Shown piece by piece: positions 26 through 62,272 of a DNA stretch of 64,000 bases. The translations under genes were made by a program, and so were the position numbers. Under the pieces are notes generated by a model, which did no database searches, was not told the origin of the DNA, and saw nothing but the letters and a program-made list of their open reading frames with translations. The stretch covers positions 62,001 to 126,000 of IMG/VR virus record IMGVR_UViG_3300022200_000019. One strand, written 5' to 3'. Each line of letters starts with the position of its first letter. The stretch's first letter is position 1.

Positions 26-664
26 TTAGGAAGTTCTTTCATTACAATACTTTATCCATTGGTCTTTAGTGATATCAAGATACCAAGCACGCAGTGGTTT
101 TCCAACCTTCTCACCATTGGGTCGTTGATTTGAAAACCACGCAAATCCTTTCTCAAGTAACCATGATGTCGCCCACCGATCTCGTTTTGCAGTCCAGTTC
201 ATTTTCATAAACACTCGATTAGTGTAATTAAAGATATCGTTTAAGAAATATTCCCAATCGCCTGCGTCTTTGTCAAATGCTCGGTCAAATTCGGTGCGAG
301 TGGCAAAAATAATGTCATAGTGTTTTGGTAGATTCATCGGAGTTTGTGGATGAATCCATAATTCGTATCGATTAACACCTAATAAATCACAACATTCTTT
401 AAATAATCCGTCTTGTACATCAGTACAATCGCATTCGATTCCTCGTTCACGCAAAATAGCAGCAAGGACGCCAATTCCTGCTCCTATATCTAGCGCAGTT
501 TTAACATTATCAATTCCGCCGTTTCTACTGTTAGCATAGTCAACAACATGTTGTTTTTCTTCATAATACCAATCCCATTTACGTCCGTATTTTGCTCCTG
601 ACTGATATTTGTCAACTTCAAAACATCTTTTGATAACCGCTTGTTTATAATCGTCAAGTGTCAT
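26..664 (-). CDS. Class I SAM-dependent methyltransferase
   Basis: Motif I ALDIGAGIG followed by DCTDV and YDII; late-type ATAAATA 7 nt before the ATG. Confidence 0.7.
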   Translation of the reverse strand: MTLDDYKQAVIKRCFEVDKYQSGAKYGRKWDWYYEEKQHVVDYANSRNGGIDNVKTALDIGAGIGVLAAILRERGIECDCTDVQDGLFKECCDLLGVNRYELWIHPQTPMNLPKHYDIIFATRTEFDRAFDKDAGDWEYFLNDIFNYTNRVFMKMNWTAKRDRWATSWLLEKGFAWFSNQRPNGEKVGKPLRAWYLDITKDQWIKYCNERTS

Positions 665-674
665 GATGACTTAT

Positions 675-1481
675 TTATTGCCAATAAGGTTCTGCTCGGT
701 TGACCTTGAGATCTTTTGCCTTGCTACGACCAAGTTCTTTGCGTTTACCTTTTAAATGATCCAGATACGCACCCCACTCGGTATTAATGAGTGGATGCCC
801 TTCACCACCGTCTAAATGTGCTGACCAATCCTGGTTGTGCATTTCAGGCATACGTCCTCGAACAATATCAAAAACATAACTATCATGCCACTCTTTAAGT
901 GTAAAGATACCGTTTTCTGCATCTTCGTACATATGTTCAAAGTTTTCTAAAAACTTACTAGCATTTGCATGTTCTAAATTTATTGCGTATAAACCGCATT
1001 CGGTATACTTTTTGCCACGACCTAAATAACTCATATCATATTGTTCAGGAATCAAGCGTTTGATCGTCTGCATTGAAATTGGACTGTGGCAATAGTTATC
1101 GCCGTCCATCCATACAAGAATTCCATCCTTCACTTCTTCAGCACACGCAAAAATGGCATATACCTTGTGAGCAAATCTAATGGCATCCCATTTAAATGCT
1201 TTTTTGCCATCTTTGCGGTCTGTTCTTGAAGGATCGGTATCATTATGCCCAGTAGCACGAGGATCATTCTTCCAGCGTTCTTTAAACGCCACAAGTTTTG
1301 GACTTGCTGTATTTAAATTTCTAACAATCAAATTGGGTGCGCTTTCTGCAACATCAAAGCCTTCTGCGTACACATAGAGTGCAATTTCAGATGGCCAATT
1401 TTGGAGAAATGATTGAACCATACGCTTTCCATATAAGTCATATCCGTTTTTGTTAAATGTAGTAACTACTGTATATTGCAT
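675..1481 (-). CDS. GT-A type glycosyltransferase (nucleotide-diphospho-sugar transferase-like)
   Basis: KVYAI..LVWMDGD (DxD), WHDSYVFD, DHLKG; TATAAATA on the minus strand at 1488-1495. Confidence 0.6.
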   Translation of the reverse strand: MQYTVVTTFNKNGYDLYGKRMVQSFLQNWPSEIALYVYAEGFDVAESAPNLIVRNLNTASPKLVAFKERWKNDPRATGHNDTDPSRTDRKDGKKAFKWDAIRFAHKVYAIFACAEEVKDGILVWMDGDNYCHSPISMQTIKRLIPEQYDMSYLGRGKKYTECGLYAINLEHANASKFLENFEHMYEDAENGIFTLKEWHDSYVFDIVRGRMPEMHNQDWSAHLDGGEGHPLINTEWGAYLDHLKGKRKELGRSKAKDLKVNRAEPYWQ

Positions 1482-1494
1482 AATTAATATTTAT

Positions 1495-2331
1495 ATGGCG
1501 CAAAAGAGCATAGCATACTTTCCAAAACAGGTCGCACTCAATGGTTCTGGTGTACTCAAAGATTTTTTAAAAGGTGCGATTAAACACGGAATAGTTCCTG
1601 TGGAAAATAGCATGGATGCTGATTATGCTGTGATATGGTCTGTGCTCTGGAACGGCAAGATGACTGCAAACCAGCGTGTATATGAGCATTACAGGCATTT
1701 CAATAAACCGGTATTTGTAATTGATGTGGGCGCACTGCATCGTGAAGTTACTTGGAAAGTGGCACTCAATAACATCAATGCACACGGTTACTATGGTCAT
1801 GAACTGAATTTAGATCCAGATCGTCCGAAAACTCTGGGAATTAGTTTACGAACTCAAACCCGCAACAACGGCAAAATTTTAATTGCCGCGCAGCACCGCA
1901 GGAGCCAACAAGTCAAAGATGTTAACATTGAACAATGGACCAATCAGATGTACAATAAAATTACATCAATTACTGATCGACCAGTGGTAATACGCCCACA
2001 TCCCAGATGCAATCTTGATTTATATCGTTTGCCCATGGGAGCAGAAATCCAACAACCAGTTAAGATTCCCAACAGCTATGACAAATTTGATTTAGAATAT
2101 GATTGGTATGCCATTGTTAACTATAACAGTGGTCCAGGCATTCAGGGAGCTCTTAATGGATGTCACGTCATAGTAAATGATTCTAGTCTGGCATTTCCTG
2201 TGTCAACCACACTGGAAAATCCTGTTTATACTCCACGTGACGAATGGTTGATAAGTATAGCACACACTGAATATACTCGAGAAGAAATTAAACAAGGTTT
2301 ATGTCTAAAAAGGCTAGCAGAAAGGCTCTAG
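1495..2331 (+). CDS. GT-B type glycosyltransferase, capsule-polysaccharide-biosynthesis-like
   Basis: VVIRPHP and NSGPGIQGALNG motifs; ATG 1495 preferred to TTG 1450, which overlaps the divergent gene. Confidence 0.55.
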   Translation: MAQKSIAYFPKQVALNGSGVLKDFLKGAIKHGIVPVENSMDADYAVIWSVLWNGKMTANQRVYEHYRHFNKPVFVIDVGALHREVTWKVALNNINAHGYYGHELNLDPDRPKTLGISLRTQTRNNGKILIAAQHRRSQQVKDVNIEQWTNQMYNKITSITDRPVVIRPHPRCNLDLYRLPMGAEIQQPVKIPNSYDKFDLEYDWYAIVNYNSGPGIQGALNGCHVIVNDSSLAFPVSTTLENPVYTPRDEWLISIAHTEYTREEIKQGLCLKRLAERL

Positions 2332-5646: not shown

Positions 5647-5662
5647 ATTTTTGTGTTATAAT
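5634..5662 (+). promoter_or_regulatory. Sigma70-type promoter overlapping the terminator
   Basis: TTGCGC-17-TATAAT with TGn extension; ATG 6 nt downstream (leaderless). Confidence 0.6.
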
Positions 5663-5668
5663 ATTGTT

Positions 5669-6787
5669 ATGATTCGTAAAGTAATCGACAGAGAAACAGC
5701 ACACTTGTGGATGCGTGAGAATTTACGCTTTAGTCGTTATGATATTAACTTCGTAGAAAATGTTGCTCGTTTCATTAATGACAACCGCCCGCTTACTGTT
5801 AAACAGAACGATTTATGGGAAAAGATTGTTCATAAGTATCGTAAGCAGATTTATAACGAAAGTCAGAACACACTCACAGATGAAGATATCCTAGCCAAGC
5901 AGTGGCGCCAAGGCCCTGTAGAGTTTGATCCTAGTTACGCTCCGTTGTTGTGGATCGAAGATGATGTTATTAAACTTCGTTTTCCGTTTAACAAAGACGC
6001 AGTCGCTGACTTGCGTACAGTAATTCAAGATGCTGGTCACGATTATGGATTAATGATGTCTTCTGTACATCATGAGTATATTCACTGGGATAGAGACGAA
6101 CGTGTATGGCGTGGTACCGCGTATCCTACCTTAATTCGAGACTTGTACTATTATTCTAAAGATCATAATTTTACTATAGATAAATCAGTTCAAGACATAG
6201 TAGATAGCATTCCTGGAGATGAGTTTGATTGGCGCCCATACGCTGAGTTATATGGTGACAGCTATATGATTAGTAATTTAAGTCCTGGATTATTAAAAGC
6301 ATTGCCACCTAATGAGATTACTCTCAACGCCGTTAGAGATCTTGTCGGATTAGAAGTTACATTAAGTGATACACTACAAAGTTATGTGGCACAGAAATAT
6401 GGATACCATATTGGACGAATTGCTTGTCAACGCGAAGTACGCATTGATATGAACGATATCAAATTGGTCAAACAGTGGCTTAGAGAAACAGATAACGATA
6501 TCTTTGTTGTACATAAGCAGTATGCTGATTATGCTGAAAATTTTAAATTAGAACAACAAACACTTGTTCCTGAAAAGTTTGTGAGTTTAGCAGACTTCAG
6601 AAACACCGCTGGCGGCATTGGTGATTATCATGTGTTTAGCAAAGATGGCGACAACTATACATTAGATAACGGTGTTGATTGTGTAGTTTATATGCCCGGA
6701 ACAGCGTTTAATTACGAAGCACTTGCACACATTGCTAAAAAGGTTATTACAGTAGTAGAAGATGAAACAAGCACGATTAATAATTAA
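5669..6787 (+). CDS. Hypothetical protein upstream of the helicase
   Basis: Long ORF overlapping the next gene; in-frame ATG 5669 directly after the -10 box. Confidence 0.6.
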   Translation: MIRKVIDRETAHLWMRENLRFSRYDINFVENVARFINDNRPLTVKQNDLWEKIVHKYRKQIYNESQNTLTDEDILAKQWRQGPVEFDPSYAPLLWIEDDVIKLRFPFNKDAVADLRTVIQDAGHDYGLMMSSVHHEYIHWDRDERVWRGTAYPTLIRDLYYYSKDHNFTIDKSVQDIVDSIPGDEFDWRPYAELYGDSYMISNLSPGLLKALPPNEITLNAVRDLVGLEVTLSDTLQSYVAQKYGYHIGRIACQREVRIDMNDIKLVKQWLRETDNDIFVVHKQYADYAENFKLEQQTLVPEKFVSLADFRNTAGGIGDYHVFSKDGDNYTLDNGVDCVVYMPGTAFNYEALAHIAKKVITVVEDETSTINN

Positions 6788-8222: not shown

Positions 8223-8223
8223 G

Positions 8224-8252
8224 TTGCAATCAAAACTAAACTATACTATAAT
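8224..8252 (+). promoter_or_regulatory. Sigma70-type promoter (leaderless transcript)
   Basis: TTGCAA-17-TATAAT, ATG 6 nt downstream. Confidence 0.65.
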
Positions 8253-8258
8253 AATACT

Positions 8259-8762
8259 ATGAGAATTCACACACTAGACAATACAGCATACAACTTAGAC
8301 ACGCTACCGGAAGAAATTGATGATATGCGTTTTGCTATTCTTGATAATAGCGATCCTAACAATCCCGATTATTTTTACATTCCGTTAATCTTTTTAGAAT
8401 CATTTACAAGTCCGGCACTTGTACTAAAGATCGGTAATAAACAAATTAAGATGCCACTGGATTGGCAGGTGTTGATTGGAGAAGATGACTTAGGAGATTT
8501 AGAATCACTTCCGCTTACTAGTCTAAATGATCGCGACTTTAAGGTGTACCAGTATAATAGTTTAAGTTCATATGCACCTACATTCCTTCCGATTGAAATT
8601 GTAGATGTGTACAATGAAGTAAATTGGTATGCACCTAAATTAAAGAATGGACAATTCCTTGCTGTTCCACTAAGTGATGGTGAGAATCCAGAATGTGTAT
8701 ACTTTATTAAAGACGTATCCCGTAACTGCGAAGTAGTAGATTATAATAAAGCGTGGGGGTAA
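8259..8762 (+). CDS. Hypothetical phage protein
   Basis: ORF directly after a promoter, within the replication cluster. Confidence 0.6.
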   Translation: MRIHTLDNTAYNLDTLPEEIDDMRFAILDNSDPNNPDYFYIPLIFLESFTSPALVLKIGNKQIKMPLDWQVLIGEDDLGDLESLPLTSLNDRDFKVYQYNSLSSYAPTFLPIEIVDVYNEVNWYAPKLKNGQFLAVPLSDGENPECVYFIKDVSRNCEVVDYNKAWG

Positions 8763-13123: not shown

Positions 13124-13867
13124 GTGTTTATGTATTCAACTTTAGCATATTTATACCAACAAACCCAGGTGGTGTTGTTATTGGACAACACTGGGGCCTA
13201 TCATAATGTGAGGTGGAATCCTGTGTACAGCAAGAACCTAAAAGCCAGCAAAGGCGTTGATAACGTTATCCTGTTTAGATTTTTAAATCAGGATCAAAAG
13301 CCAGTAGACATTACAGGACTAACATTTACTTGTCGTGTAATGAGTAGAGATGGTACAGAACTACTATTTGCTAGAGATTTAGAAACAGTTAGTGCTACAC
13401 GAGGACAAGCAAAACTTACTATTGTTGAATCAGACTTAGACAATGTACAATCTCAACTAGCAAATTATTCTATCACAGTAGACCGTTCAACACTTACAGA
13501 ACCTGTGTATGTAGACGATAATGCTGGAGCACGTGGCGTACTTTACATCGCTGATAGTGCTATGCCAGAGTTTGTAGCAAGTTCAGAAATAACTCTACCA
13601 AGTTTTACAGCAGGACAAACAAATTACAGTTCTGAATGGCAACCGGAACAGTATTTACAAACAGTACAATACACAAACAGTTCGTTTGTAGGTACTGTAA
13701 CTGTACAGGGATCGCCTACCGGAACAGAATGGTATGACTTGACTTCTGCTACGTTTAGCAGCGCAGACTCAAACACAAAATACATTAATGTAGAAGGCTT
13801 ACACAGCTATATGCGTTTAAAAGTTGATAGTACTAGTGGTACTGTTGGCAGCGTATATGTAAGATAA
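13124..13867 (+). CDS. Probable virion structural protein (BppU-like N-terminal region)
   Basis: FRFLNQDQKPVDITGLTF motif; CATAAATA upstream; alternative ATG at 13130. Confidence 0.5.
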   Translation: MFMYSTLAYLYQQTQVVLLLDNTGAYHNVRWNPVYSKNLKASKGVDNVILFRFLNQDQKPVDITGLTFTCRVMSRDGTELLFARDLETVSATRGQAKLTIVESDLDNVQSQLANYSITVDRSTLTEPVYVDDNAGARGVLYIADSAMPEFVASSEITLPSFTAGQTNYSSEWQPEQYLQTVQYTNSSFVGTVTVQGSPTGTEWYDLTSATFSSADSNTKYINVEGLHSYMRLKVDSTSGTVGSVYVR

Positions 13868-13875
13868 ATATTGAT

Positions 13876-14226
13876 ATGGCGCAAATTACTACACAACTTT
13901 TAGTTTCACAACAAACGCATCCAGGCGATAGCTCTGTTCAAACCGTAACTGGTTCTGCTGTTAAAGGCAACGGGTACTATGGACAGACCGACGGGCGTCA
14001 TACTGCGCTATTTTCTGTAACAGGATTTACTGGAACCATTACTATTCAAGGCAGTTTAGTTACGAGCCCAGGTTCTACAGACTGGGCAGACATTACTGTG
14101 TTTTCAGACGGCACAACACAAGAAGCCGGTAATACAGCAGTTAACTTTACCGGTAACTTTGTATGGCTACGTGCTGTAGTTGAATATACAGACGGCACAG
14201 TAAATTCAGTTCGCATTAACTACTAA
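13876..14226 (+). CDS. Probable virion protein, similar to the C-terminal domain of the preceding ORF
   Basis: FTGTITIQGS...WADI...GNFVWLRA versus FVGTVTVQGS...WYDL...GLHSYMRL. Confidence 0.55.
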   Translation: MAQITTQLLVSQQTHPGDSSVQTVTGSAVKGNGYYGQTDGRHTALFSVTGFTGTITIQGSLVTSPGSTDWADITVFSDGTTQEAGNTAVNFTGNFVWLRAVVEYTDGTVNSVRINY

Positions 14227-14239: not shown

Positions 14240-14887
14240 ATGATTCGCAATATTGCCGCGTTTGGCGACAGTTGGATTCATGGTGATGAAATTGTACACC
14301 CAGATCCTAATGCCACCGAAAAAGAAAAACGTTTATACCGAGAAGAAAACTGTACTGTAGGACAGTTAGGAAAACTTCTTGGCGTAACTGTTGAAAATTA
14401 TGGTGTGAGTGGAAATAGCCTACAAGGTACAGTTTGGGAATTTTATCATTGGCTTAATGATGAACATAGACACACAGATGCTTCTCCGCAAGAAACACTA
14501 GTAGTAATAGGTTTAACAGAAGCAAGCCGCAATAGTTGGTGGAATTCGAATAATTTTGTACACAATCATATAATGCACGATCGCCATCCTTGGAATTCGT
14601 TTGTAAAACATCATTATATGTATAACGAAGACGAAACTGTTGAATGTATGCGTTATTGGGAAACCACTGAATTCTTTTATAATTGGTGTAATACAAATGC
14701 GGTTAAATTGTTAATGGTTAATGTATTTCCGCCGCCGTATTTGTCCAATTTAGTCACGAATCCGAGTTGGAATATGCGAGGCGAGGTATCTGGCGATATG
14801 CTTGCTCCGGGCAAACACGCAAATGAATCTGGATCAACACATTTAGCTAAACACTTGCAAATGTATGCAAAATCCATTATAATATAA
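14240..14887 (+). CDS. SGNH/GDSL hydrolase-like protein
   Basis: AFGDSW, NYGVSGNS, C-terminal KHANESG. Confidence 0.6.
   Translation: MIRNIAAFGDSWIHGDEIVHPDPNATEKEKRLYREENCTVGQLGKLLGVTVENYGVSGNSLQGTVWEFYHWLNDEHRHTDASPQETLVVIGLTEASRNSWWNSNNFVHNHIMHDRHPWNSFVKHHYMYNEDETVECMRYWETTEFFYNWCNTNAVKLLMVNVFPPPYLSNLVTNPSWNMRGEVSGDMLAPGKHANESGSTHLAKHLQMYAKSIII
14855..14883 (+). promoter_or_regulatory. Sigma70-type promoter for primase-helicase (leaderless)
   Basis: TTGCAA-17-TATAAT, GTG start 6 nt downstream. Confidence 0.6.
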
Positions 14888-14889
14888 CG

Positions 14890-15855
14890 GTGTTAAATGT
14901 ACTATCTTACATCAACGGAAAACGAAAAACCAACAGTTCCGGCTGGACTAGTTTTGATGCTCCGTGTTGCGTGCATAATGGAGAAACTGCCGACCGCAAA
15001 CAGCGCGGTGGCTTCAAATTCTCAAGCGATACAGATTGGAGCTATCACTGTTTCAACTGTGGCTATACTGCTAGTTTTACTCTCGGGTATCCAGTAAGTC
15101 ACAAAGCACACCGACTATTATCATGGATGGGTGTTCCAGATATTGAAATACACCGTTTAACACTCGATAGTTTAAAACACAAAAACATTAAGCAATTAAT
15201 TCGTGAACGACAACAAGAAGAAATACGAATTAGCTTTCCAGAAGTTGAACTACCAAAAACCGCACGACTAATTGACGACAACGACACACCTCTTTTAGAA
15301 TATTTGCGTGATAGAAGTATCGATCCATGGGCATATCCGTACATGACAGATATAGAACAAACACGCCCGGGTATTCTTATACCGTATACATACGATAACA
15401 CAGTTGTCGGTTGGACTACGAGATTTTTAGATGATCGAAAACCAAAATATCTAAACAATTGCTCTGCCGCAGGCTATGTGTTTGGAACAGATTTACAACA
15501 CGACGATTGGCAGATTGCTATTGCTGTTGAAGGCCAGTTTGACGCATTAAGTATAGATGGTGTTGCAATTACAACAAACAGAATTAGCGATACACAAGCA
15601 GCCGTATTAAGACGACTTAATAGAGAAATTGTAGTTGTGCCAGATCAGGATCGTGCAGGATTAGAACTCGTAAACGACGCAGTTAAATATGGCTTTAGTG
15701 TTAGTATCCCAGACTGGGACGCAGATGTAAAGGATGTTAATGACGCAGTAAAGCGTTACGGCAAATTGGCCACATTAATAAGTATTATTGAGAACAAGAA
15801 TTCAAGCAAGATCAAAATTGAGCTAGCACGAAAAGCTCTCGAACGGAAATTATGA
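14890..15855 (+). CDS. DNA primase (T4 gp61/DnaG-like)
   Basis: Zinc ribbon PCC..H...YHCFNCG; TOPRIM VEGQFDA, PDQD, KDVND. Confidence 0.85.
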   Translation: MLNVLSYINGKRKTNSSGWTSFDAPCCVHNGETADRKQRGGFKFSSDTDWSYHCFNCGYTASFTLGYPVSHKAHRLLSWMGVPDIEIHRLTLDSLKHKNIKQLIRERQQEEIRISFPEVELPKTARLIDDNDTPLLEYLRDRSIDPWAYPYMTDIEQTRPGILIPYTYDNTVVGWTTRFLDDRKPKYLNNCSAAGYVFGTDLQHDDWQIAIAVEGQFDALSIDGVAITTNRISDTQAAVLRRLNREIVVVPDQDRAGLELVNDAVKYGFSVSIPDWDADVKDVNDAVKRYGKLATLISIIENKNSSKIKIELARKALERKL

Positions 15856-19950: not shown

Positions 19951-19968
19951 ATGACTGTTAAATACGCT

Positions 19969-20193
19969 ATGCATCACAATCCATTCACTGTTTATGAATC
20001 ACCCGACGGCGGTAAAACTGTATACCAACGTAGCATAGGGTCAACCGAACGCAGATTAGTAAAATCTGGTCAATATGACGAGTGGAATGGGTTTGCGCTT
20101 AGATACGACTGGGACGGTCTGGCAGAACGACACCCAGCAATACTGGAACAACTAGAACGATTAAAAGTATTGGCGGAGTTATGCAACAAATAA
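19969..20193 (+). CDS. Hypothetical protein
   Basis: VYESPDGGKTVYQR; ATG 4 nt after TTAAATA. Confidence 0.55.
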   Translation: MHHNPFTVYESPDGGKTVYQRSIGSTERRLVKSGQYDEWNGFALRYDWDGLAERHPAILEQLERLKVLAELCNK

Positions 20194-22608: not shown

Positions 22609-22637
22609 TTGACAAATCTTGTATAGTGTTATATAAT
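22609..22637 (+). promoter_or_regulatory. Sigma70-type promoter with an overlapping 11-bp inverted repeat
   Basis: TTGACA-17-TATAAT; atagtgttata/tataacactat at 22623-22647. Confidence 0.75.
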
Positions 22638-22645
22638 ATAACACT

Positions 22646-23368
22646 ATGTCTAAATTAATAAAACGATACGATTATAAGAACCTATCTCGTGAACAAGTAG
22701 ACGGCAAACGTTTATATGCCACACCAGACGGCAGCAGAGTTCCTTCAGTAACTACTATCCTGGACAAGACTAAGCCTGCAGAAGCCAAACAAGCTCTCAT
22801 GGAGTGGAAAAAAAGAGTTGGTGTAGAAAAAGCACAACAGATCACCACAGAAGCTGCCAATCGTGGCACACGCATGCACACCTATCTGGAAAACTATGTG
22901 CTTACTGGCGAAATCAAAGACAAAGGAAGCAATCCGTTTGGTTGGGCCAGCCACGACATGGCACAGGAAGTAATTCACAAAGGTCTAATACATGCAGATG
23001 AATTCTGGGGTACGGAAGTTCCACTGTATTTTCCAGGCATCTATGCTGGAACCACAGACTGTGTGGGTGTGCATCAGGGTGCGCCAGCCATTCTGGACTT
23101 CAAACAATCCAACAAACCCAAGAAAACGGAATGGATCACAGATTACTTTTTGCAATTGGCCGCATACTCAGAAGCACACAACGAAGTGTATGGCACTAAA
23201 ATTAACAAAGGTGTCATCCTGATGTGTGTTCGCCCCACAGAATCAGAACCAGGAATCTACACCAAACCACCTGAATATCAGGAATGGATCATTGAAGGTT
23301 CAGAATTTGAACACTGGCGTAATGAATGGTGGAAACGAGTAGAACAGTTTTACATGGAGAAAAAATAA
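22646..23368 (+). CDS. PD-(D/E)XK exonuclease (RecB/Cas4-like phage exonuclease)
   Basis: PSVTTIL, RGTRMH, YAGTTD, LDFKQS, QLAAY. Confidence 0.8.
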   Translation: MSKLIKRYDYKNLSREQVDGKRLYATPDGSRVPSVTTILDKTKPAEAKQALMEWKKRVGVEKAQQITTEAANRGTRMHTYLENYVLTGEIKDKGSNPFGWASHDMAQEVIHKGLIHADEFWGTEVPLYFPGIYAGTTDCVGVHQGAPAILDFKQSNKPKKTEWITDYFLQLAAYSEAHNEVYGTKINKGVILMCVRPTESEPGIYTKPPEYQEWIIEGSEFEHWRNEWWKRVEQFYMEKK

Positions 23369-36962: not shown

Positions 36963-36968
36963 CACTCG

Positions 36969-38336: not shown

Positions 38337-38353
38337 TATAATGCAGTAACAGG

Positions 38354-38379: not shown

Positions 38380-38403
38380 GTTAAATATTAGTATAACAGG
38401 AGA

Positions 38404-43571: not shown

Positions 43572-43614
43572 CTCTGTATATTTCTAACTGTTTGATTAAT
43601 AATAAATATCTTTA

Positions 43615-44025
43615 ATGAAAAAATTGGTGTGTGCGGCACTTGCTGTATACTGCTTAAATGTTACAGCACACAGTCGCGATGATTATGAATACATAAACTG
43701 GAATTCATTTCGTGTTTATGAAGAAATAGAAAAACGCCCAAAACTTGATGTTTTTGCTGGGCATAGTGTTGGTTTTGGTTACACACAAAAGTATAATCAA
43801 ATTGATACACTTGTTGTAGGCGAAGTAGGTGGCGCTCATAGCCGCTGGCTAGGCCCTAGAACTCAATTATACACAGAAGCAAATGTAGCAACAGACTTGT
43901 TTACAGAAGCAAAAGTAAACATCAATCATTTTAACAACAAATATTCAGTTACAAGATTTGTTCTACGCAAAGACAACACTGACCAAGGTGGCTTTGTTGG
44001 ATTTGGTTATATGCGTCGTTTTTGA
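43615..44025 (+). CDS. Small exported protein, possible outer-membrane beta-barrel
   Basis: Signal peptide, alternating beta pattern, C-terminal GFVGFGYMRRF. Confidence 0.45.
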   Translation: MKKLVCAALAVYCLNVTAHSRDDYEYINWNSFRVYEEIEKRPKLDVFAGHSVGFGYTQKYNQIDTLVVGEVGGAHSRWLGPRTQLYTEANVATDLFTEAKVNINHFNNKYSVTRFVLRKDNTDQGGFVGFGYMRRF

Positions 44026-44039
44026 CACTAAATATCCGT

Positions 44040-46082
44040 ATGAAGAAACTACTGAGTCCATGGTGGGCATTGATTACCTTATTTGTTCTCACGGCTGTAT
44101 TTTTACAACGTCCTAACTTTACTGAAAGTATCAAATTAAATTACTTTGACACACTTATTACTAGTAGAGAAGCAGTAGACAATAACATTTATATTGTTAA
44201 TATTGACGAAGCCGCACTAGAGAAATATGGTCAGTATCCTTTTCCACGTAACATTTACGGCGACATTATCAAAGACATTTACAATCGTGGCGCTGGATTA
44301 GTTATTTGGAATATTATGATGCCGGAAGCAGATCGCTTTGGCGGAGATGAACAGTTAGCAGGAGTTATGACTGAATTTCCTGTTATATTAGCAAGCCGCC
44401 CCTCTGTCAAAAATAAAAATGTTCCAATGCAACCGGCATCAAATACAATCAATGCACAGTATGTGGATCAGTTATTTCCTTATCCAGGTATTATTTCAAA
44501 TATTCCAGAACTTGAACAAGTAGCAGTAGGCTCTGGTATTGTTTCAACTGAACCTGAAATCGATGGCGTTAACAGAAGATTACCAGCACTTGCTGTGGTT
44601 GGTGATTTGGTGTATCCAGGTATTGCTCTTGAAACACTTCGTGTTATTGCAGGACAACCTAGTTTTGATGTTAAACTAGCACCTAATGGTATTGATAAAT
44701 TTAGAATACGTGGTCACGGACCTATTGCTACAGATGAAATGGGACGTATTTGGATTGATTGGGCACAGCGTAGCAAACAGGTTAGCGTAATCAATATGCC
44801 TGCAGACTTTGGCGGCGCAGTAGTTATCGTAGATGTGACTGCGGCAGGCATTGCTAACCCTGTTCCTACAGCGTTAGGAGCAAAATTTCCCGGTGAAGTT
44901 CACTCAGCAATGCTAGGAACAATGTTTAATAAAACAAATATTCAACGTCCATACTGGGCAGATACATTTGAAATTCCTGCGGCATTTTTAGCAGGACTAT
45001 TATTAATTTTAGTATCACGTTGGACCTGGCTAGGACTAGGATTAACTGTTGTGCTTGGCGGTGCTGTTGTCCCTGCGTCAATGTATATGTTTGACACAGA
45101 ACTATTTTTGTTAGACGCAACAGGTCCTCTTGCAATTATTGTCCTTGTGGCATTACACACATACGGTATTAAATTTGTACGTGAGTTCTTAGAAAAGCAA
45201 GCAATCAAGAAACAGTTTGCCGGTTACTGCTCACCGGAAGTTGTTCGTTTATTACAAGAAAACCCGGATCTTATTAAGAAGGGTGTTAAGAAAGACGTAA
45301 GTGTTATGTTCTCAGATTTGCGCGGCTTTACTCCAATTGGCGAACACTTTGGCGCAGACGTTAAAGGTTTAGGAGATTATATGAATGGCTATATGGATGC
45401 TATTACGCAGCCTATCCTAAATCACAACGGTATGGTTATTAAGTATGTAGGTGACGCAAGCATGCACATACAAGGTGCGCCTATTGAAGATGACAGACAC
45501 GCATACAACATTGTCGAAACAGGCTTACAAATGTTAGACGCTGTTGACGCTTATACACGAGAAGCAGAAGCACGTGGTTTGCCACCAGCAGCAATGGGTT
45601 TCGGCATTAACTCAGGCGAAGGCTTTATTGGTGAAATGGGCAGCACAGCAAGACACAGTTATGACATCTTAGGCGATATGGTTTCAACAGCGGCTCGATT
45701 AGAAGCACGTTGTAAAGCATATGGTGTGCTATGTATCATTGGCGCAGAAACATACAACAGAACAGCGGATGACTTCTTCTACTTATATCTGGACAATTTA
45801 CAACCAAAAGGCAAAACAGTAGCAGATTTCATTTATACAGCGTTACGCATCAAAGGAAATATCACGGACTATGGCACTGCACGTGAGTTACATAATAATA
45901 TGCATCAAGCATATAAAGAAAGAGATTTTGATAAAGCAATTGGTATGTGCATGGGCCTGAAAGGTGAATTTGACGGGCAAATGGACAAATATTATAAAAT
46001 GTGGATTGAACGTTGCGAATTAATGAAGACCATGAAATTAGATAAGAGCTGGAATGGCGAGTGGATTGCTAACGAAAAATAA
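44040..46082 (+). CDS. CHASE2-domain class III adenylate cyclase
   Basis: IVNIDEAALEKYGQYPFPR (CHASE2), three TMs, FSDLRGFT, KYVGDA, GINSG, YDILGDMVSTAARLE; ATG 44040 follows CTAAATA. Confidence 0.92.
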   Translation: MKKLLSPWWALITLFVLTAVFLQRPNFTESIKLNYFDTLITSREAVDNNIYIVNIDEAALEKYGQYPFPRNIYGDIIKDIYNRGAGLVIWNIMMPEADRFGGDEQLAGVMTEFPVILASRPSVKNKNVPMQPASNTINAQYVDQLFPYPGIISNIPELEQVAVGSGIVSTEPEIDGVNRRLPALAVVGDLVYPGIALETLRVIAGQPSFDVKLAPNGIDKFRIRGHGPIATDEMGRIWIDWAQRSKQVSVINMPADFGGAVVIVDVTAAGIANPVPTALGAKFPGEVHSAMLGTMFNKTNIQRPYWADTFEIPAAFLAGLLLILVSRWTWLGLGLTVVLGGAVVPASMYMFDTELFLLDATGPLAIIVLVALHTYGIKFVREFLEKQAIKKQFAGYCSPEVVRLLQENPDLIKKGVKKDVSVMFSDLRGFTPIGEHFGADVKGLGDYMNGYMDAITQPILNHNGMVIKYVGDASMHIQGAPIEDDRHAYNIVETGLQMLDAVDAYTREAEARGLPPAAMGFGINSGEGFIGEMGSTARHSYDILGDMVSTAARLEARCKAYGVLCIIGAETYNRTADDFFYLYLDNLQPKGKTVADFIYTALRIKGNITDYGTARELHNNMHQAYKERDFDKAIGMCMGLKGEFDGQMDKYYKMWIERCELMKTMKLDKSWNGEWIANEK

Positions 46083-46382
46083 TTAAGGGTGGAAATTACC
46101 TTGGAAACAATGGCGTATTTCGTGCCCAAATATTTCGTGTGAAGTATGCTTATTTGTGTAAACAACACATGATTTGCCATCTATCGACACAGTAGCACAG
46201 CCTAACCACCCATCATATCTGTACGGTAATCCAACCTTTTCGCAATGCTCTGTAATATCGCCAGCAGTAATCCAGGTGATAGTTATTGACTGTGAATCTG
46301 GTTTTTGAACGAATTGAACATCCTGACCAGCGTAAGCCATTGAAGATAAACAAAATATAGTAGGTATAATTACCTTTCTCAT
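46083..46382 (-). CDS. Small exported protein with HExxH motif
   Basis: Signal peptide, GHEIRHC; ATAAATA 6 nt before the ATG. Confidence 0.55.
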   Translation of the reverse strand: MRKVIIPTIFCLSSMAYAGQDVQFVQKPDSQSITITWITAGDITEHCEKVGLPYRYDGWLGCATVSIDGKSCVVYTNKHTSHEIFGHEIRHCFQGNFHP

Positions 46383-46391
46383 CTAATTTAT

Positions 46392-46775
46392 TTATTTCTT
46401 AGATGGAGGATTATTAACTGCTGCTTTTTCTGCTTGTCTGTGTAAGTTCTTTTCTTGTACTTTAGTTTGGTCGAACTGCTTACTAATTGAAGCATACTGA
46501 TCAACGATTGCTTGAGCATCTTCTTCTTTGATTTGGCCGTGTTTACCGTAGTATTCTAATACTATGCTTAACTTGGTGTTTAAGCGAATCATGTCATTAT
46601 CTAACATGCGGATACGGTCTACTAGAGCAATAAGTGTTTTCTTTGTATCGCCGATAACCGGATCAATTTCGTCGGTTACCCAACGCCATATAAAATACAC
46701 AAAATATCCAAGACCCATTGCGGCAATAACTGGAAAGCCGTATTCATTGATCGCTTGTACAATATCGTTAGGCAT
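46392..46775 (-). CDS. Single-TM coiled-coil membrane protein (YvrJ/BhlA-like GFP motif)
   Basis: YGFPVIAAMGLGYFVYF, then RIRMLDNDMIRL; paralog of 46993. Confidence 0.6.
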   Translation of the reverse strand: MPNDIVQAINEYGFPVIAAMGLGYFVYFIWRWVTDEIDPVIGDTKKTLIALVDRIRMLDNDMIRLNTKLSIVLEYYGKHGQIKEEDAQAIVDQYASISKQFDQTKVQEKNLHRQAEKAAVNNPPSKK

Positions 46776-53702: not shown

Positions 53703-53732
53703 TTGACAAACCGCGCAAAAACATCATATACT
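53703..53732 (+). promoter_or_regulatory. Sigma70-type promoter (leaderless)
   Basis: TTGACA-18-TATACT; ATG 53739 6 nt downstream. Confidence 0.7.
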
Positions 53733-53738
53733 ATGCAT

Positions 53739-54179
53739 ATGAAAGTAAGAGAACTAGCACGAGCAATGAGTAAGCCTGTTCCGGGCAAGGACGACTATTG
53801 GCGTAATCTCTACTTTCCTAGCCGACACAAGATCACTCGTACATACAACGCACTGAACAAACTTATTTTTAATAATAAACTTAATCCTTGCAAGATTGTA
53901 ACCAAGTCGTTGTCCAACGCTTGGGCATTTGCCTATCAAGAACCTGGATTTCGCACAGAGATTCATCTTAATGGTCGTTATCCTTGTGAGCAATATTTTA
54001 TTGCTGTGTTAGGGCACGAAATGGTACACCAATGGCAATGGGATGTTGAGGCTCCAATTCGACGCAAACAAGGTCTAAAAGAGCGCACAGGGCATGGTAT
54101 AAACTTCTACGAATGGAAGGATATATTTGAATATCATGATATCCATTTTGGAAGGACTATTCCACATTATCATAAATGA
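53739..54179 (+). CDS. SprT-like zinc metalloprotease
   Basis: YNALNKLIFNNKL, LGHEMVHQWQ, HGINF. Confidence 0.8.
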   Translation: MKVRELARAMSKPVPGKDDYWRNLYFPSRHKITRTYNALNKLIFNNKLNPCKIVTKSLSNAWAFAYQEPGFRTEIHLNGRYPCEQYFIAVLGHEMVHQWQWDVEAPIRRKQGLKERTGHGINFYEWKDIFEYHDIHFGRTIPHYHK

Positions 54180-54442
54180 GTTGGATATCGCTACCGGACC
54201 CTATACGATCTTCATGCTATAATTGTAAGCATTTAGAGTTTACAGAAGAATGGATTACATGTTATCCTTGGGAAGTTGGTCTAGGACATGCAAGCCATTC
54301 GCAAGGTGCTTTTTTAAAATGGCCCGGTGATGCCCATTGCAGTATTCATAATCGAATTGCATCTAATGCATTAATGTGCATGGAATTTGAACATAAATCC
54401 GGATACTCTCACTGGAGTCTTCACCAAAAATATAGACAATAA
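54176..54442 (+). CDS. Hypothetical Cys/His-rich protein
   Basis: ATGA-coupled; CYNCKH. Confidence 0.5.
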   Translation: MSWISLPDPIRSSCYNCKHLEFTEEWITCYPWEVGLGHASHSQGAFLKWPGDAHCSIHNRIASNALMCMEFEHKSGYSHWSLHQKYRQ

Positions 54443-54461
54443 TCAGCGAAACATATATAAT
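54433..54461 (+). promoter_or_regulatory. Sigma70-type promoter (leaderless)
   Basis: TAGACA-17-TATAAT, ATG 5 nt downstream. Confidence 0.65.
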
Positions 54462-54466
54462 AACAT

Positions 54467-54844
54467 ATGTTCGCAATAGGCGATATACACATGGATCAAG
54501 ATCCACCCAAGAAACCTAATATGGAACGAGACATTAGGCGCTCGTGGCACATTTGCGACAAAATTGAACAAAATGCTGAATATGCGCAACGGATGTATGC
54601 TGCCTTGTGTAACACAGAATGGGGCAAAGCAGATTTATTTGAACGCATCAAAGGAACAACATGGGCCTGCTCTTGGCGCTATGCAGGAGAACTTGTTGCT
54701 AATATAGGCAACAGAAACGAGGATTATTTGGACTATTATTGTTCCGGAGGTGAAGGACACGTAGACGATGAAATACGTGAAGATTTAAAATCAATAGGGT
54801 GGGTATTGGTATCTGCACCCACTACATTAGAAGACTTTATTTAA
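54467..54844 (+). CDS. Hypothetical phage protein
   Basis: YAALCN..W.CSWRYAG..DYLDYYCSG. Confidence 0.6.
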   Translation: MFAIGDIHMDQDPPKKPNMERDIRRSWHICDKIEQNAEYAQRMYAALCNTEWGKADLFERIKGTTWACSWRYAGELVANIGNRNEDYLDYYCSGGEGHVDDEIREDLKSIGWVLVSAPTTLEDFI

Positions 54845-60548: not shown

Positions 60549-60551
60549 TCG

Positions 60552-60580
60552 TTGACAATCAGCAAACATGCTGTTATAGT
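60552..60580 (+). promoter_or_regulatory. Sigma70-type promoter of uvsE
   Basis: TTGACA-17-TATAGT with TGn. Confidence 0.7.
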
Positions 60581-60622
60581 GTTTGCAGTTACAAAATCCA
60601 TACAAACTTATCTACAAACACT

Positions 60623-61627
60623 ATGACAGGTAAAATTGGTTTTGCATGTAAATATATGCATCCTGATCAAACACAAAAGAAAAAACTTTTGGAAGAAATT
60701 CAGCGGCCGTTAAACACACGTGGAACTACAGTTGCGTGGCTTAACAGACAAACCCGAGAAGTCGCCGAGGAACGCATGTGGGACATTATGGTCCACAACA
60801 CAAACTCAATACAGAGACTTGTTGAATATGTTGGAAGTTTATCCGAACAATATCGAATGGTTCGGCTTGGATCAGATATACTCCCTATGTATACTGAGCC
60901 TACTTGGTCTTACTTTTGGCGCAAGAGTGATGTTATTGAATACGTCGCTCGAGCGTTTAGTACAGTGGGCGATACAGCAAGGCAGCTTGGTGTTCGTCTC
61001 TCATTTCATCCTGGTCAGTTTACTGTGCTGGCAAGCGATCGCGATGATGTTGTAAATAAGAGTATAGACGAGTTCGAATATCACGTTGACATGGCTCGTT
61101 GGATGGGCTATGGACAACAGTGGCAAGACTTCAAGATTAATGTACATATCGCGGGCAAGCGAGGCCCACAAGGTATCATTGACGTTTTACCCAGACTATC
61201 ATCCGAGGCACGAAACACTCTTACAATCGAAAATGACGAAATGTCCTGGGGAATCGACGCAAGCCTCGAGCTTGCAAAACACGTTGCTTTGGTGCTCGAC
61301 ATTCACCACCACTGGGTCGCTACAGGTGAATATATTTTACCAACCGATGATCGATACTTACGTATAGTTGATTCGTGGCGTGGGGTGCGTCCTGTAATTC
61401 ACTACTCGGTTTCCCGTGAAGATTTGCTATTAGGGCATGATCCGGATGTGCTGCCCGATTTGGAAGCACTATTAGCTCAAGGTTACAAAAAAGCAAAATT
61501 GCGAGCACACTCGGATATGATGTGGAATCGTGCGTGTAATCGCTGGGCACTGCAATTTTTAGATACAGCGGACATTATGGTAGAAAGCAAGTTTAAAAAT
61601 CTTGCAAGTCAAAACATAAATATATAA
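60623..61627 (+). CDS. uvsE: UV damage endonuclease UvsE
   Basis: IGFAC, RLGSD, RLSFHPGQFTVLAS, IENDE, LVLDIHHH, HYS, AHSD, MVESK.K. Confidence 0.92.
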   Translation: MTGKIGFACKYMHPDQTQKKKLLEEIQRPLNTRGTTVAWLNRQTREVAEERMWDIMVHNTNSIQRLVEYVGSLSEQYRMVRLGSDILPMYTEPTWSYFWRKSDVIEYVARAFSTVGDTARQLGVRLSFHPGQFTVLASDRDDVVNKSIDEFEYHVDMARWMGYGQQWQDFKINVHIAGKRGPQGIIDVLPRLSSEARNTLTIENDEMSWGIDASLELAKHVALVLDIHHHWVATGEYILPTDDRYLRIVDSWRGVRPVIHYSVSREDLLLGHDPDVLPDLEALLAQGYKKAKLRAHSDMMWNRACNRWALQFLDTADIMVESKFKNLASQNINI

Positions 61628-62272
61628 ATGAAACTTGTTGAAGAATTACGCTGGTACATGAATATACTAACTGAAACTGATAACATCAATCAGGGCGTTA
61701 GCGATAATCTTGGTTTGATTAAGGGTGTATTTTCCTCTCAAGGTGTAGATTGGGTAGAACCGTACTTAACAACCGAAGGTGCAATTAATCGACGCGAAGT
61801 TGGTAACCACCGTGGACTGTATTGGATTTGGCCTGAAATTAATTTTTATTTTGGCAAAGCAGCAACTAACACAGTAATTGGGCGGCACAGAACACATCGT
61901 CTAAAACTTGATGTTAATCTATCAGGATTGTACGGTCCACCTGGTGAAAAGAAAGAACCAAAAAACACTTTCCCAGAAGGTTGGAAAGAAGCAGTCTGCA
62001 AGTACATTATTGGTGGATGCCCACAGATTCCCAGCCATTGGGAAAAAGCCACCCATCCAACAGATCCCAACCAGAAAAAATGGGTCAAACCAGGAGTATT
62101 AGATTTTCCTGTTAAACATGTGGTGGATGTGGATAAATTGCCTGTTCTAGTTTGGGATCTAGATCATTTAGATGCAAAAACCATATCAAAATTAGAAGAT
62201 CTGATCAATGTCACCATCTGGCCGTACGCAAATTCAGGCACTTATCGCCGTAGAAAGCAACAAAATCAGTAA
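61628..62272 (+). CDS. GIY-YIG-like nuclease (tentative)
   Basis: GLYWI..FYFGKA...R..H; CATAAATA 5 nt before the ATG. Confidence 0.45.
   Translation: MKLVEELRWYMNILTETDNINQGVSDNLGLIKGVFSSQGVDWVEPYLTTEGAINRREVGNHRGLYWIWPEINFYFGKAATNTVIGRHRTHRLKLDVNLSGLYGPPGEKKEPKNTFPEGWKEAVCKYIIGGCPQIPSHWEKATHPTDPNQKKWVKPGVLDFPVKHVVDVDKLPVLVWDLDHLDAKTISKLEDLINVTIWPYANSGTYRRRKQQNQ

What the first reader, a model, noticed from the sequence alone, without database searches (positions are those of the whole stretch)
664..61630. Widespread leaderless genes plus bS21 and anti-SD RNAs suggest a translation-rewiring strategy
Seen: start codons sit only 4-8 nt after a promoter element with no SD. For sigma70 -10 boxes these are 5669, 8259, 14890 (primase), 22646 (exonuclease), 53739 and 54467. 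For late TAAATA boxes they are 664, 1481 and 46382 (minus strand) and 13876, 19969, 34003, 36969 (rpsU), 43615, 44040 and 61628. The earliest-type genes (62405-63831, 3840) instead have strong AGGAG leaders. Known: bS21 acts near the anti-SD and is carried by various large phages; leaderless mRNAs initiate on 70S ribosomes without an SD. Inference: SD-dependent host or early mRNAs could be suppressed while leaderless phage mRNAs escape.
Basis: partly seen in the sequence, partly recalled or inferred. Interest (0 to 1): 0.62.

Follow-up and report, generated by a model that had tools for sequence, protein, structure and literature searches.

The report
Phage promoters fused to start codons
In this uncultured aquatic jumbo phage, and in its relatives and the SAR11 phage HTVC008M, about a third or more of recognisable promoters sit so close to the start codon that the mRNA should have no leader and no ribosome-binding site; this layout is conserved and apparently undescribed, but its proposed link to the phage's ribosomal protein bS21 is not shown.

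Summary
All 16 cited starts have TATAAT (5-8 nt) or TAAATA (4-7 nt) directly before the start codon, with no Shine-Dalgarno (SD) sequence. The window lies in a 213-kb IMG/VR jumbo-phage record whose nearest cultured kin is Pseudomonas phage PA5oct.

- **Enrichment:** TAAATA is the most enriched hexamer 4-8 nt before starts (19 seen, 0.58 expected). The same is true in a 215-kb relative.
- **Exclusivity:** the layout excludes an SD (0/19, against 23/32 late promoters with leaders).
- **Conservation:** 42 of 47 distinct primase upstream regions keep TTGnnn-17-TAnnnT-6-start. A 96%-identical relative of one gene has 10 extra bases carrying an SD.
- **Other phages:** pelagiphage HTVC008M shows the same layout (14 sites). 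T4, Syn9, P-SSM4 and PA5oct essentially lack it.

Leaderless transcription is therefore well supported by sequence, but no RNA data could be obtained.

The bS21-driven rewiring idea is weak. Most leadered late genes of the phage keep SDs. PA5oct has bS21 without leaderless late genes. The rpsU site is not conserved. Only one anti-SD-like hairpin exists. One published result is compatible with the idea: HTVC008M bS21 cut translation of a GFP reporter to about 5%.

The parts
5654..5671 (+). Extended -10 promoter (TGT-TATAAT), 6 nt, then ATG of a 372-aa gene. An intrinsic terminator lies just upstream (5615-5646).
   Evidence: Conserved in G002 and G003.
8224..8261 (+). TTGCAA-17-TATAAT-6-ATG, start of a 167-aa gene (phrog_11279).
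   Evidence: Leaderless layout kept in G002, G003, G005 and G004. The PA5oct orthologue has the same promoter type plus a 24-nt leader with an SD.
14855..14892 (+). TTGCAA-17-TATAAT-6-GTG, start of the DNA primase gene (14890-15855).
   Evidence: 42 of 47 distinct homologue upstream regions have TAnnnT exactly 6 nt before the start, 40 of 47 have a 17-bp spacer to TTGnnn, and none of 47 has an SD. Same layout in PA5oct.
22609..22648 (+). TTGACA-17-TATAAT-8-ATG, start of a PD-(D/E)XK exonuclease gene.
   Evidence: Kept in G001 and G003, and in PA5oct as TTGACA-17-TATAAT-7-ATG. The HTVC008M orthologue has a leader.
53703..53741 (+). TTGACA-18-TATACT-6-ATG, start of a 146-aa gene.
   Evidence: Homologues in other contigs carry either TAAATA-4-8-ATG or an SD.
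54433..54469 (+). TAGACA-17-TATAAT-5-ATG, start of a 125-aa gene.
   Evidence: Distant homologues are parts of longer ORFs, so conservation could not be judged.
13863..13878 (+). GATAAATA-5-ATG, start of a 116-aa gene with a virion-structural-protein match.
   Evidence: Kept in relatives down to 53% identity. The PA5oct orthologue has TAAATA, 22 nt and an SD.
19957..19971 (+). TTAAATA-4-ATG directly after a terminator (19925-19950), start of a 74-aa gene.
   Evidence: Kept in G001 and G002.
33991..34005 (+). CATAAATA-4-ATG, first gene (430 aa, membrane protein) of the conserved block that ends with rpsU.
   Evidence: 22 of 24 homologues at 37-93% identity keep TAAATA 4-7 nt before ATG.
36955..36971 (+). 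TATAAATA-6-ATG before rpsU. Doubtful as a promoter: the TAA is the stop codon of the upstream gene.
   Evidence: Absent in the 96%- and 66%-identical relatives and in most of 80 bS21 loci.
36969..37202 (+). rpsU: ribosomal protein bS21, 77 aa, with a basic C-terminal extension.
   Evidence: PF01165, E 2.6e-16. Matches solved bS21 chains. 209 metagenomic relatives. A CobS-like AAA ATPase lies directly upstream, as in HTVC008M.
43601..43617 (+). AATAAATA-6-ATG, start of a 136-aa secreted protein.
   Evidence: signal peptide begins at the Met.
44027..44042 (+). CTAAATA-5-ATG, start of a 680-aa CHASE2 plus nucleotide cyclase gene.
   Evidence: The HTVC008M homologue (36% identity) has CTAAATA-5-ATG as well.
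61615..61630 (+). CATAAATA-5-ATG, start of a 214-aa gene. The upstream gene's stop abuts the ATG.
   Evidence: No relatives found.
662..679 (-). AATAAATA-7-ATG, start of a 212-aa gene.
   Evidence: A 96%-identical relative (L311) has the same TAAATA followed by 17 nt that contain GAGG.
1479..1495 (-). TATAAATA-6-ATG, start of a 268-aa gene.
   Evidence: Kept in G002, G003 and G005. G004 has TAAATA 25 nt upstream plus AAGGA.
46380..46396 (-). AATAAATA-6-ATG, start of a 99-aa secreted protein.
38350..38406 (+). Contrast case: terminator hairpin, then TTAAATA, an 18-nt leader with AGGAGA, then ATG. This is a leadered late unit.

Best explanation
The window belongs to an uncultured aquatic jumbo myovirus related to PA5oct. 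It appears to use two promoter classes. One is a host sigma70-type class (TTGACA-17-TATAAT). The other is a T4-type late class whose core is TAAATA.

In roughly a quarter of the sigma70-type units and a third of the late units, the promoter is placed so that transcription should begin at, or within about 2 nt of, the A or G of the start codon. The spacing is 6 nt after TATAAT, and 4-7 nt (mode 5) after TAAATA. The first cistron would then be made from a leaderless mRNA, translated from a 5'-terminal AUG without SD pairing. Downstream cistrons and the other units use ordinary SD leaders.

The layout is inherited and maintained by selection across the clade. It can switch to a leadered-plus-SD form by short insertions or deletions.

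What is shown: motif, spacing, exclusivity with SD, and conservation. What is inferred: the transcription start sites, the late timing, and use of a gp55-like factor.

bS21 lies at the end of a conserved block whose first gene is one of these late leaderless genes. It is probably co-expressed late, but nothing ties its function to leaderless translation.
For: - **Enrichment.** TAAATA is the top hexamer 4-8 nt before starts in G000 (19 observed, 0.58 expected) and in G004, a 215-kb relative with 49.5% GC (17 observed, 0.29 expected). It is not enriched in PA5oct.
- **Two distance classes.** TAAATA lies either 4-7 nt or about 15-30 nt before starts.
- **Exclusivity with SD.** 0 of 19 close sites have an SD, against 23 of 32 distant ones (Fisher 1.6e-7).
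- **Start codon.** All 23 close-site starts are ATG, against 79% overall.
- **Primase.** 42 of 47 distinct upstream regions from 78 homologue loci (42-100% identity) keep TAnnnT exactly 6 nt before the start, with TTGnnn at a 17-bp spacer and a diverged spacer sequence. PA5oct has the same layout.
- **Gene 34003.** 22 of 24 homologues keep the layout.
- **Switches between forms.** Orthologues alternate between leaderless and leadered-plus-SD forms. One pair is 96% identical and differs by about 10 nt that carry the SD.
- **Terminators.** Several sites follow an intrinsic terminator directly, which leaves no room for a leader.
- **Stop codons do not explain it.** Only 7 of 19 (G000), 1 of 17 (G004) and 1 of 14 (HTVC008M) motifs reuse the upstream gene's stop codon. 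2, 6 and 3 sites respectively have no same-strand gene within 400 nt upstream.
- **HTVC008M.** 14 sites, 11 of them at exactly 5 nt, lie before annotated tail, baseplate and head genes. These include two divergent sites inside a 26-nt intergenic region.
- **Negative controls.** T4 0/34, Syn9 0/27, P-SSM4 3/28, PA5oct 1/51.
- **Literature.** The T4 late TATA box lies about one helical turn before the start site (PMC2988020). A TA-like signal about 10 bp before start codons is an accepted marker of leaderless genes (PMC3160421).
Against: - No transcript 5' ends are available.
- No gp55-like late sigma was found in G000 or G004. Both records are only about 61% complete. The factor is present in PA5oct, HTVC008M and Syn9.
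- Most leaderless genes have no known function, so 'late' rests on motif likeness and a few structural-protein matches.
- The host is unknown, so its capacity for leaderless translation is unknown.
- Seven G000 sites overlap an upstream stop codon and could also be read by re-initiation.
- Gene starts come from my own simple gene caller. They were checked against RefSeq only for part of HTVC008M.
Confidence: 0.8

Rival explanations
1. Translation rewiring by bS21. Phage bS21 enters host ribosomes late, weakens SD/anti-SD pairing, and so favours the phage's leaderless late mRNAs over host mRNAs.
For: - bS21 is real and ends a conserved block headed by a leaderless late gene.
- Two separate bS21-encoding lineages (this clade and HTVC008M) are rich in leaderless-type late promoters. 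The bS21-less T4, Syn9 and P-SSM4 are not.
- bS21 is core to pelagimyophages and absent from cyanomyophages (PMC7029224).
- Ribosomes with HTVC008M bS21 translated a GFP reporter at about 5% of wild type (PMC6375957).
- Genes downstream of leaderless late genes are SD-poor (6/31 against 95/221, p 0.011).
Against: - PA5oct has bS21 (E 5.5e-16) but 1/51 leaderless-type late sites.
- 72-90% of leadered late genes in G000, G004 and HTVC008M carry SDs, so blocking SD pairing would hurt the phage itself.
- The sigma70-type (presumably earlier) genes are leaderless too, before late bS21 could act.
- rpsU is not itself reliably leaderless.
- Only three bS21-positive lineages were compared, so the association is not significant.
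- From my own knowledge, not checked here: the kasugamycin-induced E. coli particles that prefer leaderless mRNA lack bS21, which points the other way.
Confidence: 0.15
2. Host adaptation. The layout reflects a host (unknown here; SAR11 for HTVC008M) whose ribosomes initiate well on 5'-terminal AUGs, as in Actinobacteria or Deinococcus-Thermus. It is not a takeover device. This rival concerns why the layout exists and is compatible with the best explanation.
For: - The trait follows lineage and habitat rather than bS21. It is strong in the aquatic uncultured clade and in HTVC008M, and weak in PA5oct of Pseudomonas.
- G000 shares bS21, a CobS-like ATPase and a CHASE2-cyclase with HTVC008M, which hints at a similar host or gene pool.
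- RNR relatives sit in MAG bins labelled Nanopelagicales or Actinomycetes and Rhodobacteraceae.
- Leaderless genes are common in some bacterial phyla (PMC3160421).
Against: - The host is not identified.
- No WhiB gene, a common mark of actinophages, was found.
- The MAG labels probably reflect phage contigs placed in the wrong bin, and those MAGs lack the primase.
- I could not test whether SAR11 genes themselves show a -10 box next to start codons.
Confidence: 0.4
3. TAAATA next to ATG is a translation signal rather than a promoter. It could be an A/U-rich ribosome or S1 landing site, or a stop-restart element. These genes would then be read from longer polycistronic mRNAs.
For: 7 of 19 G000 sites overlap the upstream stop codon, and many sites lie in tight gene arrays.
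Against: - The same motif occurs 15-30 nt upstream with an SD in between.
- Orthologues and near-identical relatives switch between the two forms.
- Sites follow terminators or have no co-directional upstream gene.
- The motif matches the T4-family late box, and HTVC008M and PA5oct encode gp55-like sigma factors.
- Sigma70-type sites with full -35 and -10 elements show the same spacing rule.
Confidence: 0.04
4. Chance in an AT-rich genome, or wrongly called start codons.
For: The genome is 38% GC. Loose TAnnnT matches near starts are common (one search lists many weak 's70?' hits that I discarded).
Against: - p about 1e-22 in two genomes, one of them 49.5% GC.
- AT-rich T4 (35% GC) shows none.
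- Signal peptides begin at the called Met.
- RefSeq starts in HTVC008M agree with mine.
- Homologue alignments begin at residue 1.
Confidence: 0.01

Closest known systems
Thermus phage phiYS40 middle and late genes (Sevostyanova et al. 2007, as summarised in PMC3594737)
   Same: A large lytic phage in which most middle and late transcripts lack leaders. It was proposed to bias host translation towards leaderless mRNA.
   Different: Its host phylum (Deinococcus-Thermus) is itself rich in leaderless genes. The proposed lever there is the IF2/IF3 ratio, not a phage ribosomal protein. Its promoters are not of the T4 late type. Here only about a third of units are leaderless, and SD leaders coexist with them.
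T4-family late promoters (TATAAATA, gp55/gp33/gp45; PMC2988020)
   Same: The same core box with no -35 element, placed before structural genes. Relatives (PA5oct, HTVC008M, Syn9) encode gp55-like sigma factors.
   Different: In T4, Syn9, P-SSM4 and PA5oct the box lies about 15-30 nt before the start codon, with an SD in between. Here, and in HTVC008M, a third to a half of boxes abut the ATG. The gp55 homologue was not found in this incomplete record.
Bacterial leaderless genes marked by a -10 box next to the ORF (lambda cI; Actinobacteria; Deinococcus-Thermus; PMC3160421, PMC12340547)
   Same: TAnnnT ends about 6 nt before the start codon, there is no SD, and AUG is preferred.
   Different: These are phage genes. 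A second, phage-specific promoter class follows the same rule, and the host is not known to be from a leaderless-rich phylum.
bS21-encoding phages (Mizuno 2019, PMC6375957; Chen 2022, PMC9723584; pelagimyophages, PMC7029224)
   Same: bS21 is carried by large aquatic lytic myoviruses, lies among late genes, and is proposed to bias initiation.
   Different: Those papers do not mention leaderless genes (searched). Chen's phages are assigned to Bacteroidetes hosts that ignore SD, whereas this phage uses SDs and TTGACA/TATAAT promoters.
Pseudomonas phage PA5oct (Arenbergviridae; PMC7318152)
   Same: Closest cultured kin (helicase 51%). It has TTGACA/TATAAT and TAAATA promoters, bS21, and leaderless-type primase and exonuclease promoters.
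   Different: Its late promoters are almost all leadered (1/51). The paper lists 32 promoters without noting leaderless ones.

Membership tests
Leaderless mRNA gene | Transcription starts at, or within a few nt of, the start codon. | not testable with these tools
The start is inferred only from promoter spacing: 6 nt after TATAAT and 4-7 nt after TAAATA.
Leaderless mRNA gene | No Shine-Dalgarno sequence before the start. | tested here: met
   0 of 19 and 0 of 23 late-type sites, 0 of 16 sigma70-type sites and 0 of 47 primase homologue regions carry an SD-like 4-mer.
Leaderless mRNA gene | A -10-type promoter element at a fixed short distance from the start codon, enriched genome-wide. | tested here: met
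Leaderless mRNA gene | AUG preferred as the start codon. | tested here: met
   23 of 23 late-type starts in G000 and 14 of 14 in HTVC008M are ATG. The exception is the primase, with GTG in 17 of 47 distinct upstream regions.
T4-type late promoter | TATAAATA-like box at about -10 with no -35 element. | tested here: met
   The conserved core is (A/T)TAAATA, and no conserved upstream element was seen in the listed sites.
T4-type late promoter | The phage encodes a gp55-type late sigma factor (with gp33 and a sliding clamp). | tested here: inconclusive
   phrog_234, phrog_12791 and a 5-sequence HMM find it in PA5oct, HTVC008M and Syn9, but not in G000 or G004, which are each about 61% complete. 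gp33 and the clamp were not searched.
T4-type late promoter | Drives late (structural) genes. | tested here: inconclusive
   In HTVC008M the sites precede tail, baseplate and head genes. In G000 two site genes match virion structural proteins and one an endonuclease VII/HNH family; the rest are unknown.
Sigma70-type promoter | TTGACA-like and TATAAT-like hexamers 17 +/- 1 bp apart. | tested here: met
   Five of the six cited sites meet this; the sixth (5669) is an extended -10 promoter. The hexamers are conserved while the spacer sequence diverges.
Ribosomal protein bS21 | Match to Pfam PF01165 above the curated cut-off. | tested here: met
   59.5 bits against a cut-off of 27. It also matches solved bS21 chains.
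Ribosomal protein bS21 | Is incorporated into host 30S subunits and alters initiation. | not testable with these tools
   Only the HTVC008M homologue (53% identical over 50 aa) has been tested, in E. coli (PMC6375957).
Anti-SD regulatory RNA | A non-coding transcript that exposes a CCUCC sequence, recurrent or conserved. | tested here: not met
   No Rfam match. Of the intergenic CCTCC sites in the genome, only the one at 58612 lies in a defined unpaired loop, and the clearest others are terminator stems or the SD of a minus-strand gene.

The most novel reading that the evidence does not exclude
A widespread group of aquatic bS21-encoding myoviruses, comprising this jumbo-phage clade and the pelagimyophages, has repeatedly moved its T4-type late promoters onto the start codons. 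The phage bS21 would be the matching ribosome adaptation: ribosomes carrying it would translate SD-led host messages poorly and 5'-terminal-AUG messages well. That would give a phage-made 'specialised ribosome' for late genes.
Probability: 0.12. Interest if true: 0.9.

Novelty: new variant of a known kind. Interest (0 to 1): 0.66.

Why it matters
- **A new gene layout.** If the start sites are confirmed, this is a systematic and evolutionarily maintained layout in abundant marine and freshwater phages. T4-type late promoters and sigma70 promoters would be fused to start codons. I found no description of this in the searchable literature.
- **It may explain a published failure.** Late-promoter prediction failed in pelagimyophages (PMC7029224).
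- **It bears on annotation.** Gene finders that assume an SD mis-place starts. The PA5oct primase start is an example.
- **It gives the bS21 hypothesis a concrete test.** The same ribosome preparations already made by Mizuno et al. could be compared on leaderless and SD-led reporters.

Tried and rejected
- **Identity by DNA.** No megablast match in the phage collection.
- **Late sigma factor.** Not found in G000 or G004 with two PHROG families, phmmer or a small HMM. Searching viral contigs with the PA5oct sigma gave only 2 loci.
- **Host inference.**
  - The CHASE2-cyclase gave no hit in genome contigs.
  - RNR hit MAG contigs of mixed labels, and those MAGs lack the primase.
  - No WhiB was found.
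  - The word search with bS21 gave 209 unnamed metagenomic relatives.
  - A 301-genome class-level search gave bS21 at no more than about 55% identity, with no taxon labels.
- **Peptide deformylase.** Not found in any of four phages, including HTVC008M, so this is uninformative.
- **Relatives of individual genes.** None found for gene 61628. Homologues of 54467 are embedded in longer ORFs and say nothing about its start.
- **Literature.** The PA5oct supplement with promoter tables is not held. Sevostyanova 2007 is not held, so phiYS40 is cited second-hand.
- **Simple bS21 rule.** The idea that bS21 presence predicts leaderless late genes was rejected once PA5oct proved to carry bS21.
- **Stop-codon explanation.** The idea that the upstream TAA stop creates TAAATA was rejected as a general explanation.

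Full report
**What the window is.** The window is bases 62001-126000 of a 212,917-bp IMG/VR virus record that CheckV rates as about 61% complete. GC content is about 38%. It has no tRNA genes and no close DNA match among deposited phages. Its DnaB-type helicase is 51% identical to that of the Pseudomonas jumbo phage PA5oct, followed by Agrobacterium Atu_ph07 and Xanthomonas XaC1. In the scheme of Iyer et al. these are 'group 2' jumbo phages. They lack their own RNA polymerase but carry sigma factors and a gp33 homologue (PMC7824862). Annotated genes in the window include primase, helicase, a PD-(D/E)XK exonuclease, ribonucleotide reductase, DNA ligase, a CHASE2-cyclase and bS21.

**The observation.** Every cited start was read.
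- The six sigma70-type sites have a TATAAT-like hexamer ending 5-8 nt (mostly 6) before the start codon. Five have a TTGACA-like hexamer 17-18 bp upstream, and one has an extended -10.
- The ten late-type sites have TAAATA ending 4-7 nt before ATG.
- None has an SD, and no downstream in-frame start has one.
- Four N-termini are signal peptides or membrane helices that begin at the proposed Met.

**Is it more than chance?** I called 252 genes with a simple codon-bias caller.
- With no motif assumed, TAAATA is the most enriched hexamer ending 4-8 nt before first start codons (19 observed, 0.58 expected). It ranks above every SD hexamer.
- TAAATA distances fall into two groups, 4-7 nt and about 15-30 nt.
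- The near group never has an SD (0/19). The far group usually does (23/32, p 1.6e-7).
- All 23 near-type starts are ATG.
- Among sigma70-like sites within 150 nt of a start, 7 of 28 have 5-8 nt spacing, with the mode at 6.
- Only 7 of the 19 near sites reuse the upstream gene's TAA stop, and several follow an intrinsic terminator directly.

**Conservation.**
- Primase: 78 homologue loci from IMG/VR (42-100% identity) gave 47 distinct upstream regions. In 42, TAnnnT ends exactly 6 nt before ATG or GTG. In 40, TTGnnn lies 17 bp upstream. None has an SD. Sequence information is concentrated in the two hexamers while the spacer drifts.
- PA5oct has the same primase layout (TTGACA-17-TATAAT-6-GTG). 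Its RefSeq start is placed 6 nt too early, directly after the -10 hexamer.
- Gene 34003 keeps TAAATA-4-7-ATG in 22 of 24 homologues down to 37% identity.
- Sites 1481, 5669, 8259, 13876, 19969 and 22646, and five sites outside the window, are also kept in relatives.
- G004, a 215-kb relative with about 50% protein identity and 49.5% GC, reproduces the whole-genome pattern independently (17 near, 27 far).
- Pooled flanks of the other fetched contigs show the same peak.

**Switching between the two forms.** Orthologues of 8259, 13876, 114863 and -17663 (window-relative coordinates of sites in G000) carry the same promoter type in PA5oct, followed by a 17-24 nt leader; three of the four have a recognisable SD. 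G004 does this for 1481. A 96%-identical relative of gene 664 has TAAATA followed by 17 nt that contain GAGG, instead of 7 nt. This is hard to explain unless TAAATA is a promoter and both forms work.

**Comparison across phages.** Counts are TAAATA at 4-7 nt against TAAATA at 12-40 nt before first starts.

| Phage | 4-7 nt | 12-40 nt |
|---|---|---|
| G000 | 19 | 34 |
| G004 | 17 | 27 |
| G005 | 6 | 8 |
| HTVC008M | 14 | 12 |
| PA5oct | 1 | 51 |
| T4 | 0 | 34 |
| Syn9 | 0 | 27 |
| P-SSM4 | 3 | 28 |

In HTVC008M, 11 of the 14 near sites are at exactly 5 nt. The starts I spot-checked in one 15-kb stretch agree with RefSeq, and most of those genes are tail, baseplate or head genes. One 26-nt divergent intergenic region holds two such sites. 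Pelagimyophage authors reported that late-promoter prediction failed in these genomes (PMC7029224), and this layout may be the reason. gp55-like sigma factors are present in HTVC008M, Syn9 and PA5oct but were not found in the incomplete G000 and G004 records.

**bS21.** The gene at 36969-37202 is a true bS21. It belongs to a large family known only from metagenomic contigs.
- It ends a conserved block: a leaderless late gene (34003), a 152-aa gene, a CobS-like AAA ATPase, then bS21.
- The CobS-bS21 pair also occurs in HTVC008M.
- Its own TATAAATA is made from the upstream stop codon and is missing in the closest relatives. I therefore do not count rpsU as a reliable leaderless gene. Co-transcription from 34003 is more likely, but that is an inference.

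**The rewiring hypothesis.** bS21 is present in G000, G004, HTVC008M and also PA5oct. It is absent from T4, Syn9 and P-SSM4. Two of three bS21-positive lineages are rich in leaderless late genes, and none of three bS21-negative phages is. That is suggestive but not significant, and PA5oct is a clear exception. The phage's own leadered late genes keep SDs, so a general block of SD pairing would be costly to the phage. Published data show that HTVC008M bS21 enters E. coli ribosomes and cuts translation of a GFP reporter to about 5% of wild type. This is compatible with the idea but equally with simple incompatibility. phiYS40 is the nearest precedent for a phage that biases translation towards leaderless mRNA, there through IF2 and IF3.

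**'Anti-SD RNAs'.** There is no Rfam match in the window. Few CCTCC sites are intergenic in the whole genome. The clearest others are a terminator stem or the SD of a minus-strand gene. One hairpin at 58600-58627 shows GCCUCCUUU unpaired, just before the terminator at 58641-58665. It is a single curiosity, not a class.

**Host.** The host is unknown. The phage uses canonical SDs and TTGACA/TATAAT promoters. From my own knowledge, this argues against a Bacteroidota host. It shares three accessory genes with a SAR11 phage. RNR relatives lie in MAG bins with actinobacterial and Rhodobacteraceae labels, probably phage contigs placed in the wrong bin. No WhiB gene was found.

**Verdict.** Leaderless expression is the best reading (confidence about 0.8) but still needs 5'-end data. 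The link to bS21 remains speculative (about 0.15).

Noticed in passing
window 44040-46082; HTVC008M 11972-13807: A 680-aa membrane CHASE2 sensor fused to an adenylate/guanylate cyclase domain (Pfam E 3.8e-30 and 1.7e-15). It has a 36%-identical homologue in pelagiphage HTVC008M (E 1e-104), and both have CTAAATA-5-ATG. This is a phage-borne nucleotide-signalling gene shared by two unrelated myovirus lineages.
   Followed up: partly
window 35760-37202; HTVC008M 89857-91431: A CobS-like AAA+ ATPase gene sits directly upstream of rpsU (bS21) in this phage and in HTVC008M. In many IMG/VR relatives, a gene of unchecked identity ends in a conserved peptide that overlaps the bS21 start (ATGA overlap).
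   Followed up: partly
window 58581-58665: A stem-loop in the 3' region of gene 58341-58586 leaves GCCUCCUUU unpaired (7 nt like the 16S anti-SD). A strong terminator follows. This is the only such element in the 213-kb record.
   Followed up: partly
window 58150-58215 and 58243-58275: Two sigma70-type promoters share the box TGTATAATACAC. The first is followed after about 10 nt by a short hairpin plus a T-run, which suggests a small RNA of roughly 40 nt. The second drives gene 58341 through a leader of roughly 65 nt with an SD.
   Followed up: no
PA5oct NC_071039.1 145855-145892: The RefSeq start of the PA5oct primase (145884) lies directly after the TATAAT box. The homologue-aligned GTG at 145890 fits TTGACA-17-TATAAT-6-GTG, so the annotated start is probably 2 codons too early.
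   Followed up: yes
L311 (IMGVR_UViG_3300022200_004313) against window 662-679: A 96%-identical relative carries about 10 extra bases (with GAGG) between the TAAATA box and the ATG. This is a natural leaderless-to-leadered switch.
   Followed up: yes
L201-L209 (genome contigs): RNR large-subunit relatives at 68-74% identity lie on contigs binned into MAGs labelled Nanopelagicales, Actinomycetes, Streptomycetaceae, Melainabacteria and Rhodobacteraceae. They are probably phage contigs placed in bacterial bins.
   Followed up: partly
window 24092-25714: A 540-aa protein with a pectate-lyase-like domain (PF12708, E 1.4e-19). It is a likely tail-spike depolymerase and lies amid replication genes.
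   Followed up: no
HTVC008M 7562-9557: The deposited annotation lists curli assembly genes (CsgF, CsgG, CsgB-like) in the pelagiphage. The first of them has a late box abutting its ATG.
   Followed up: no
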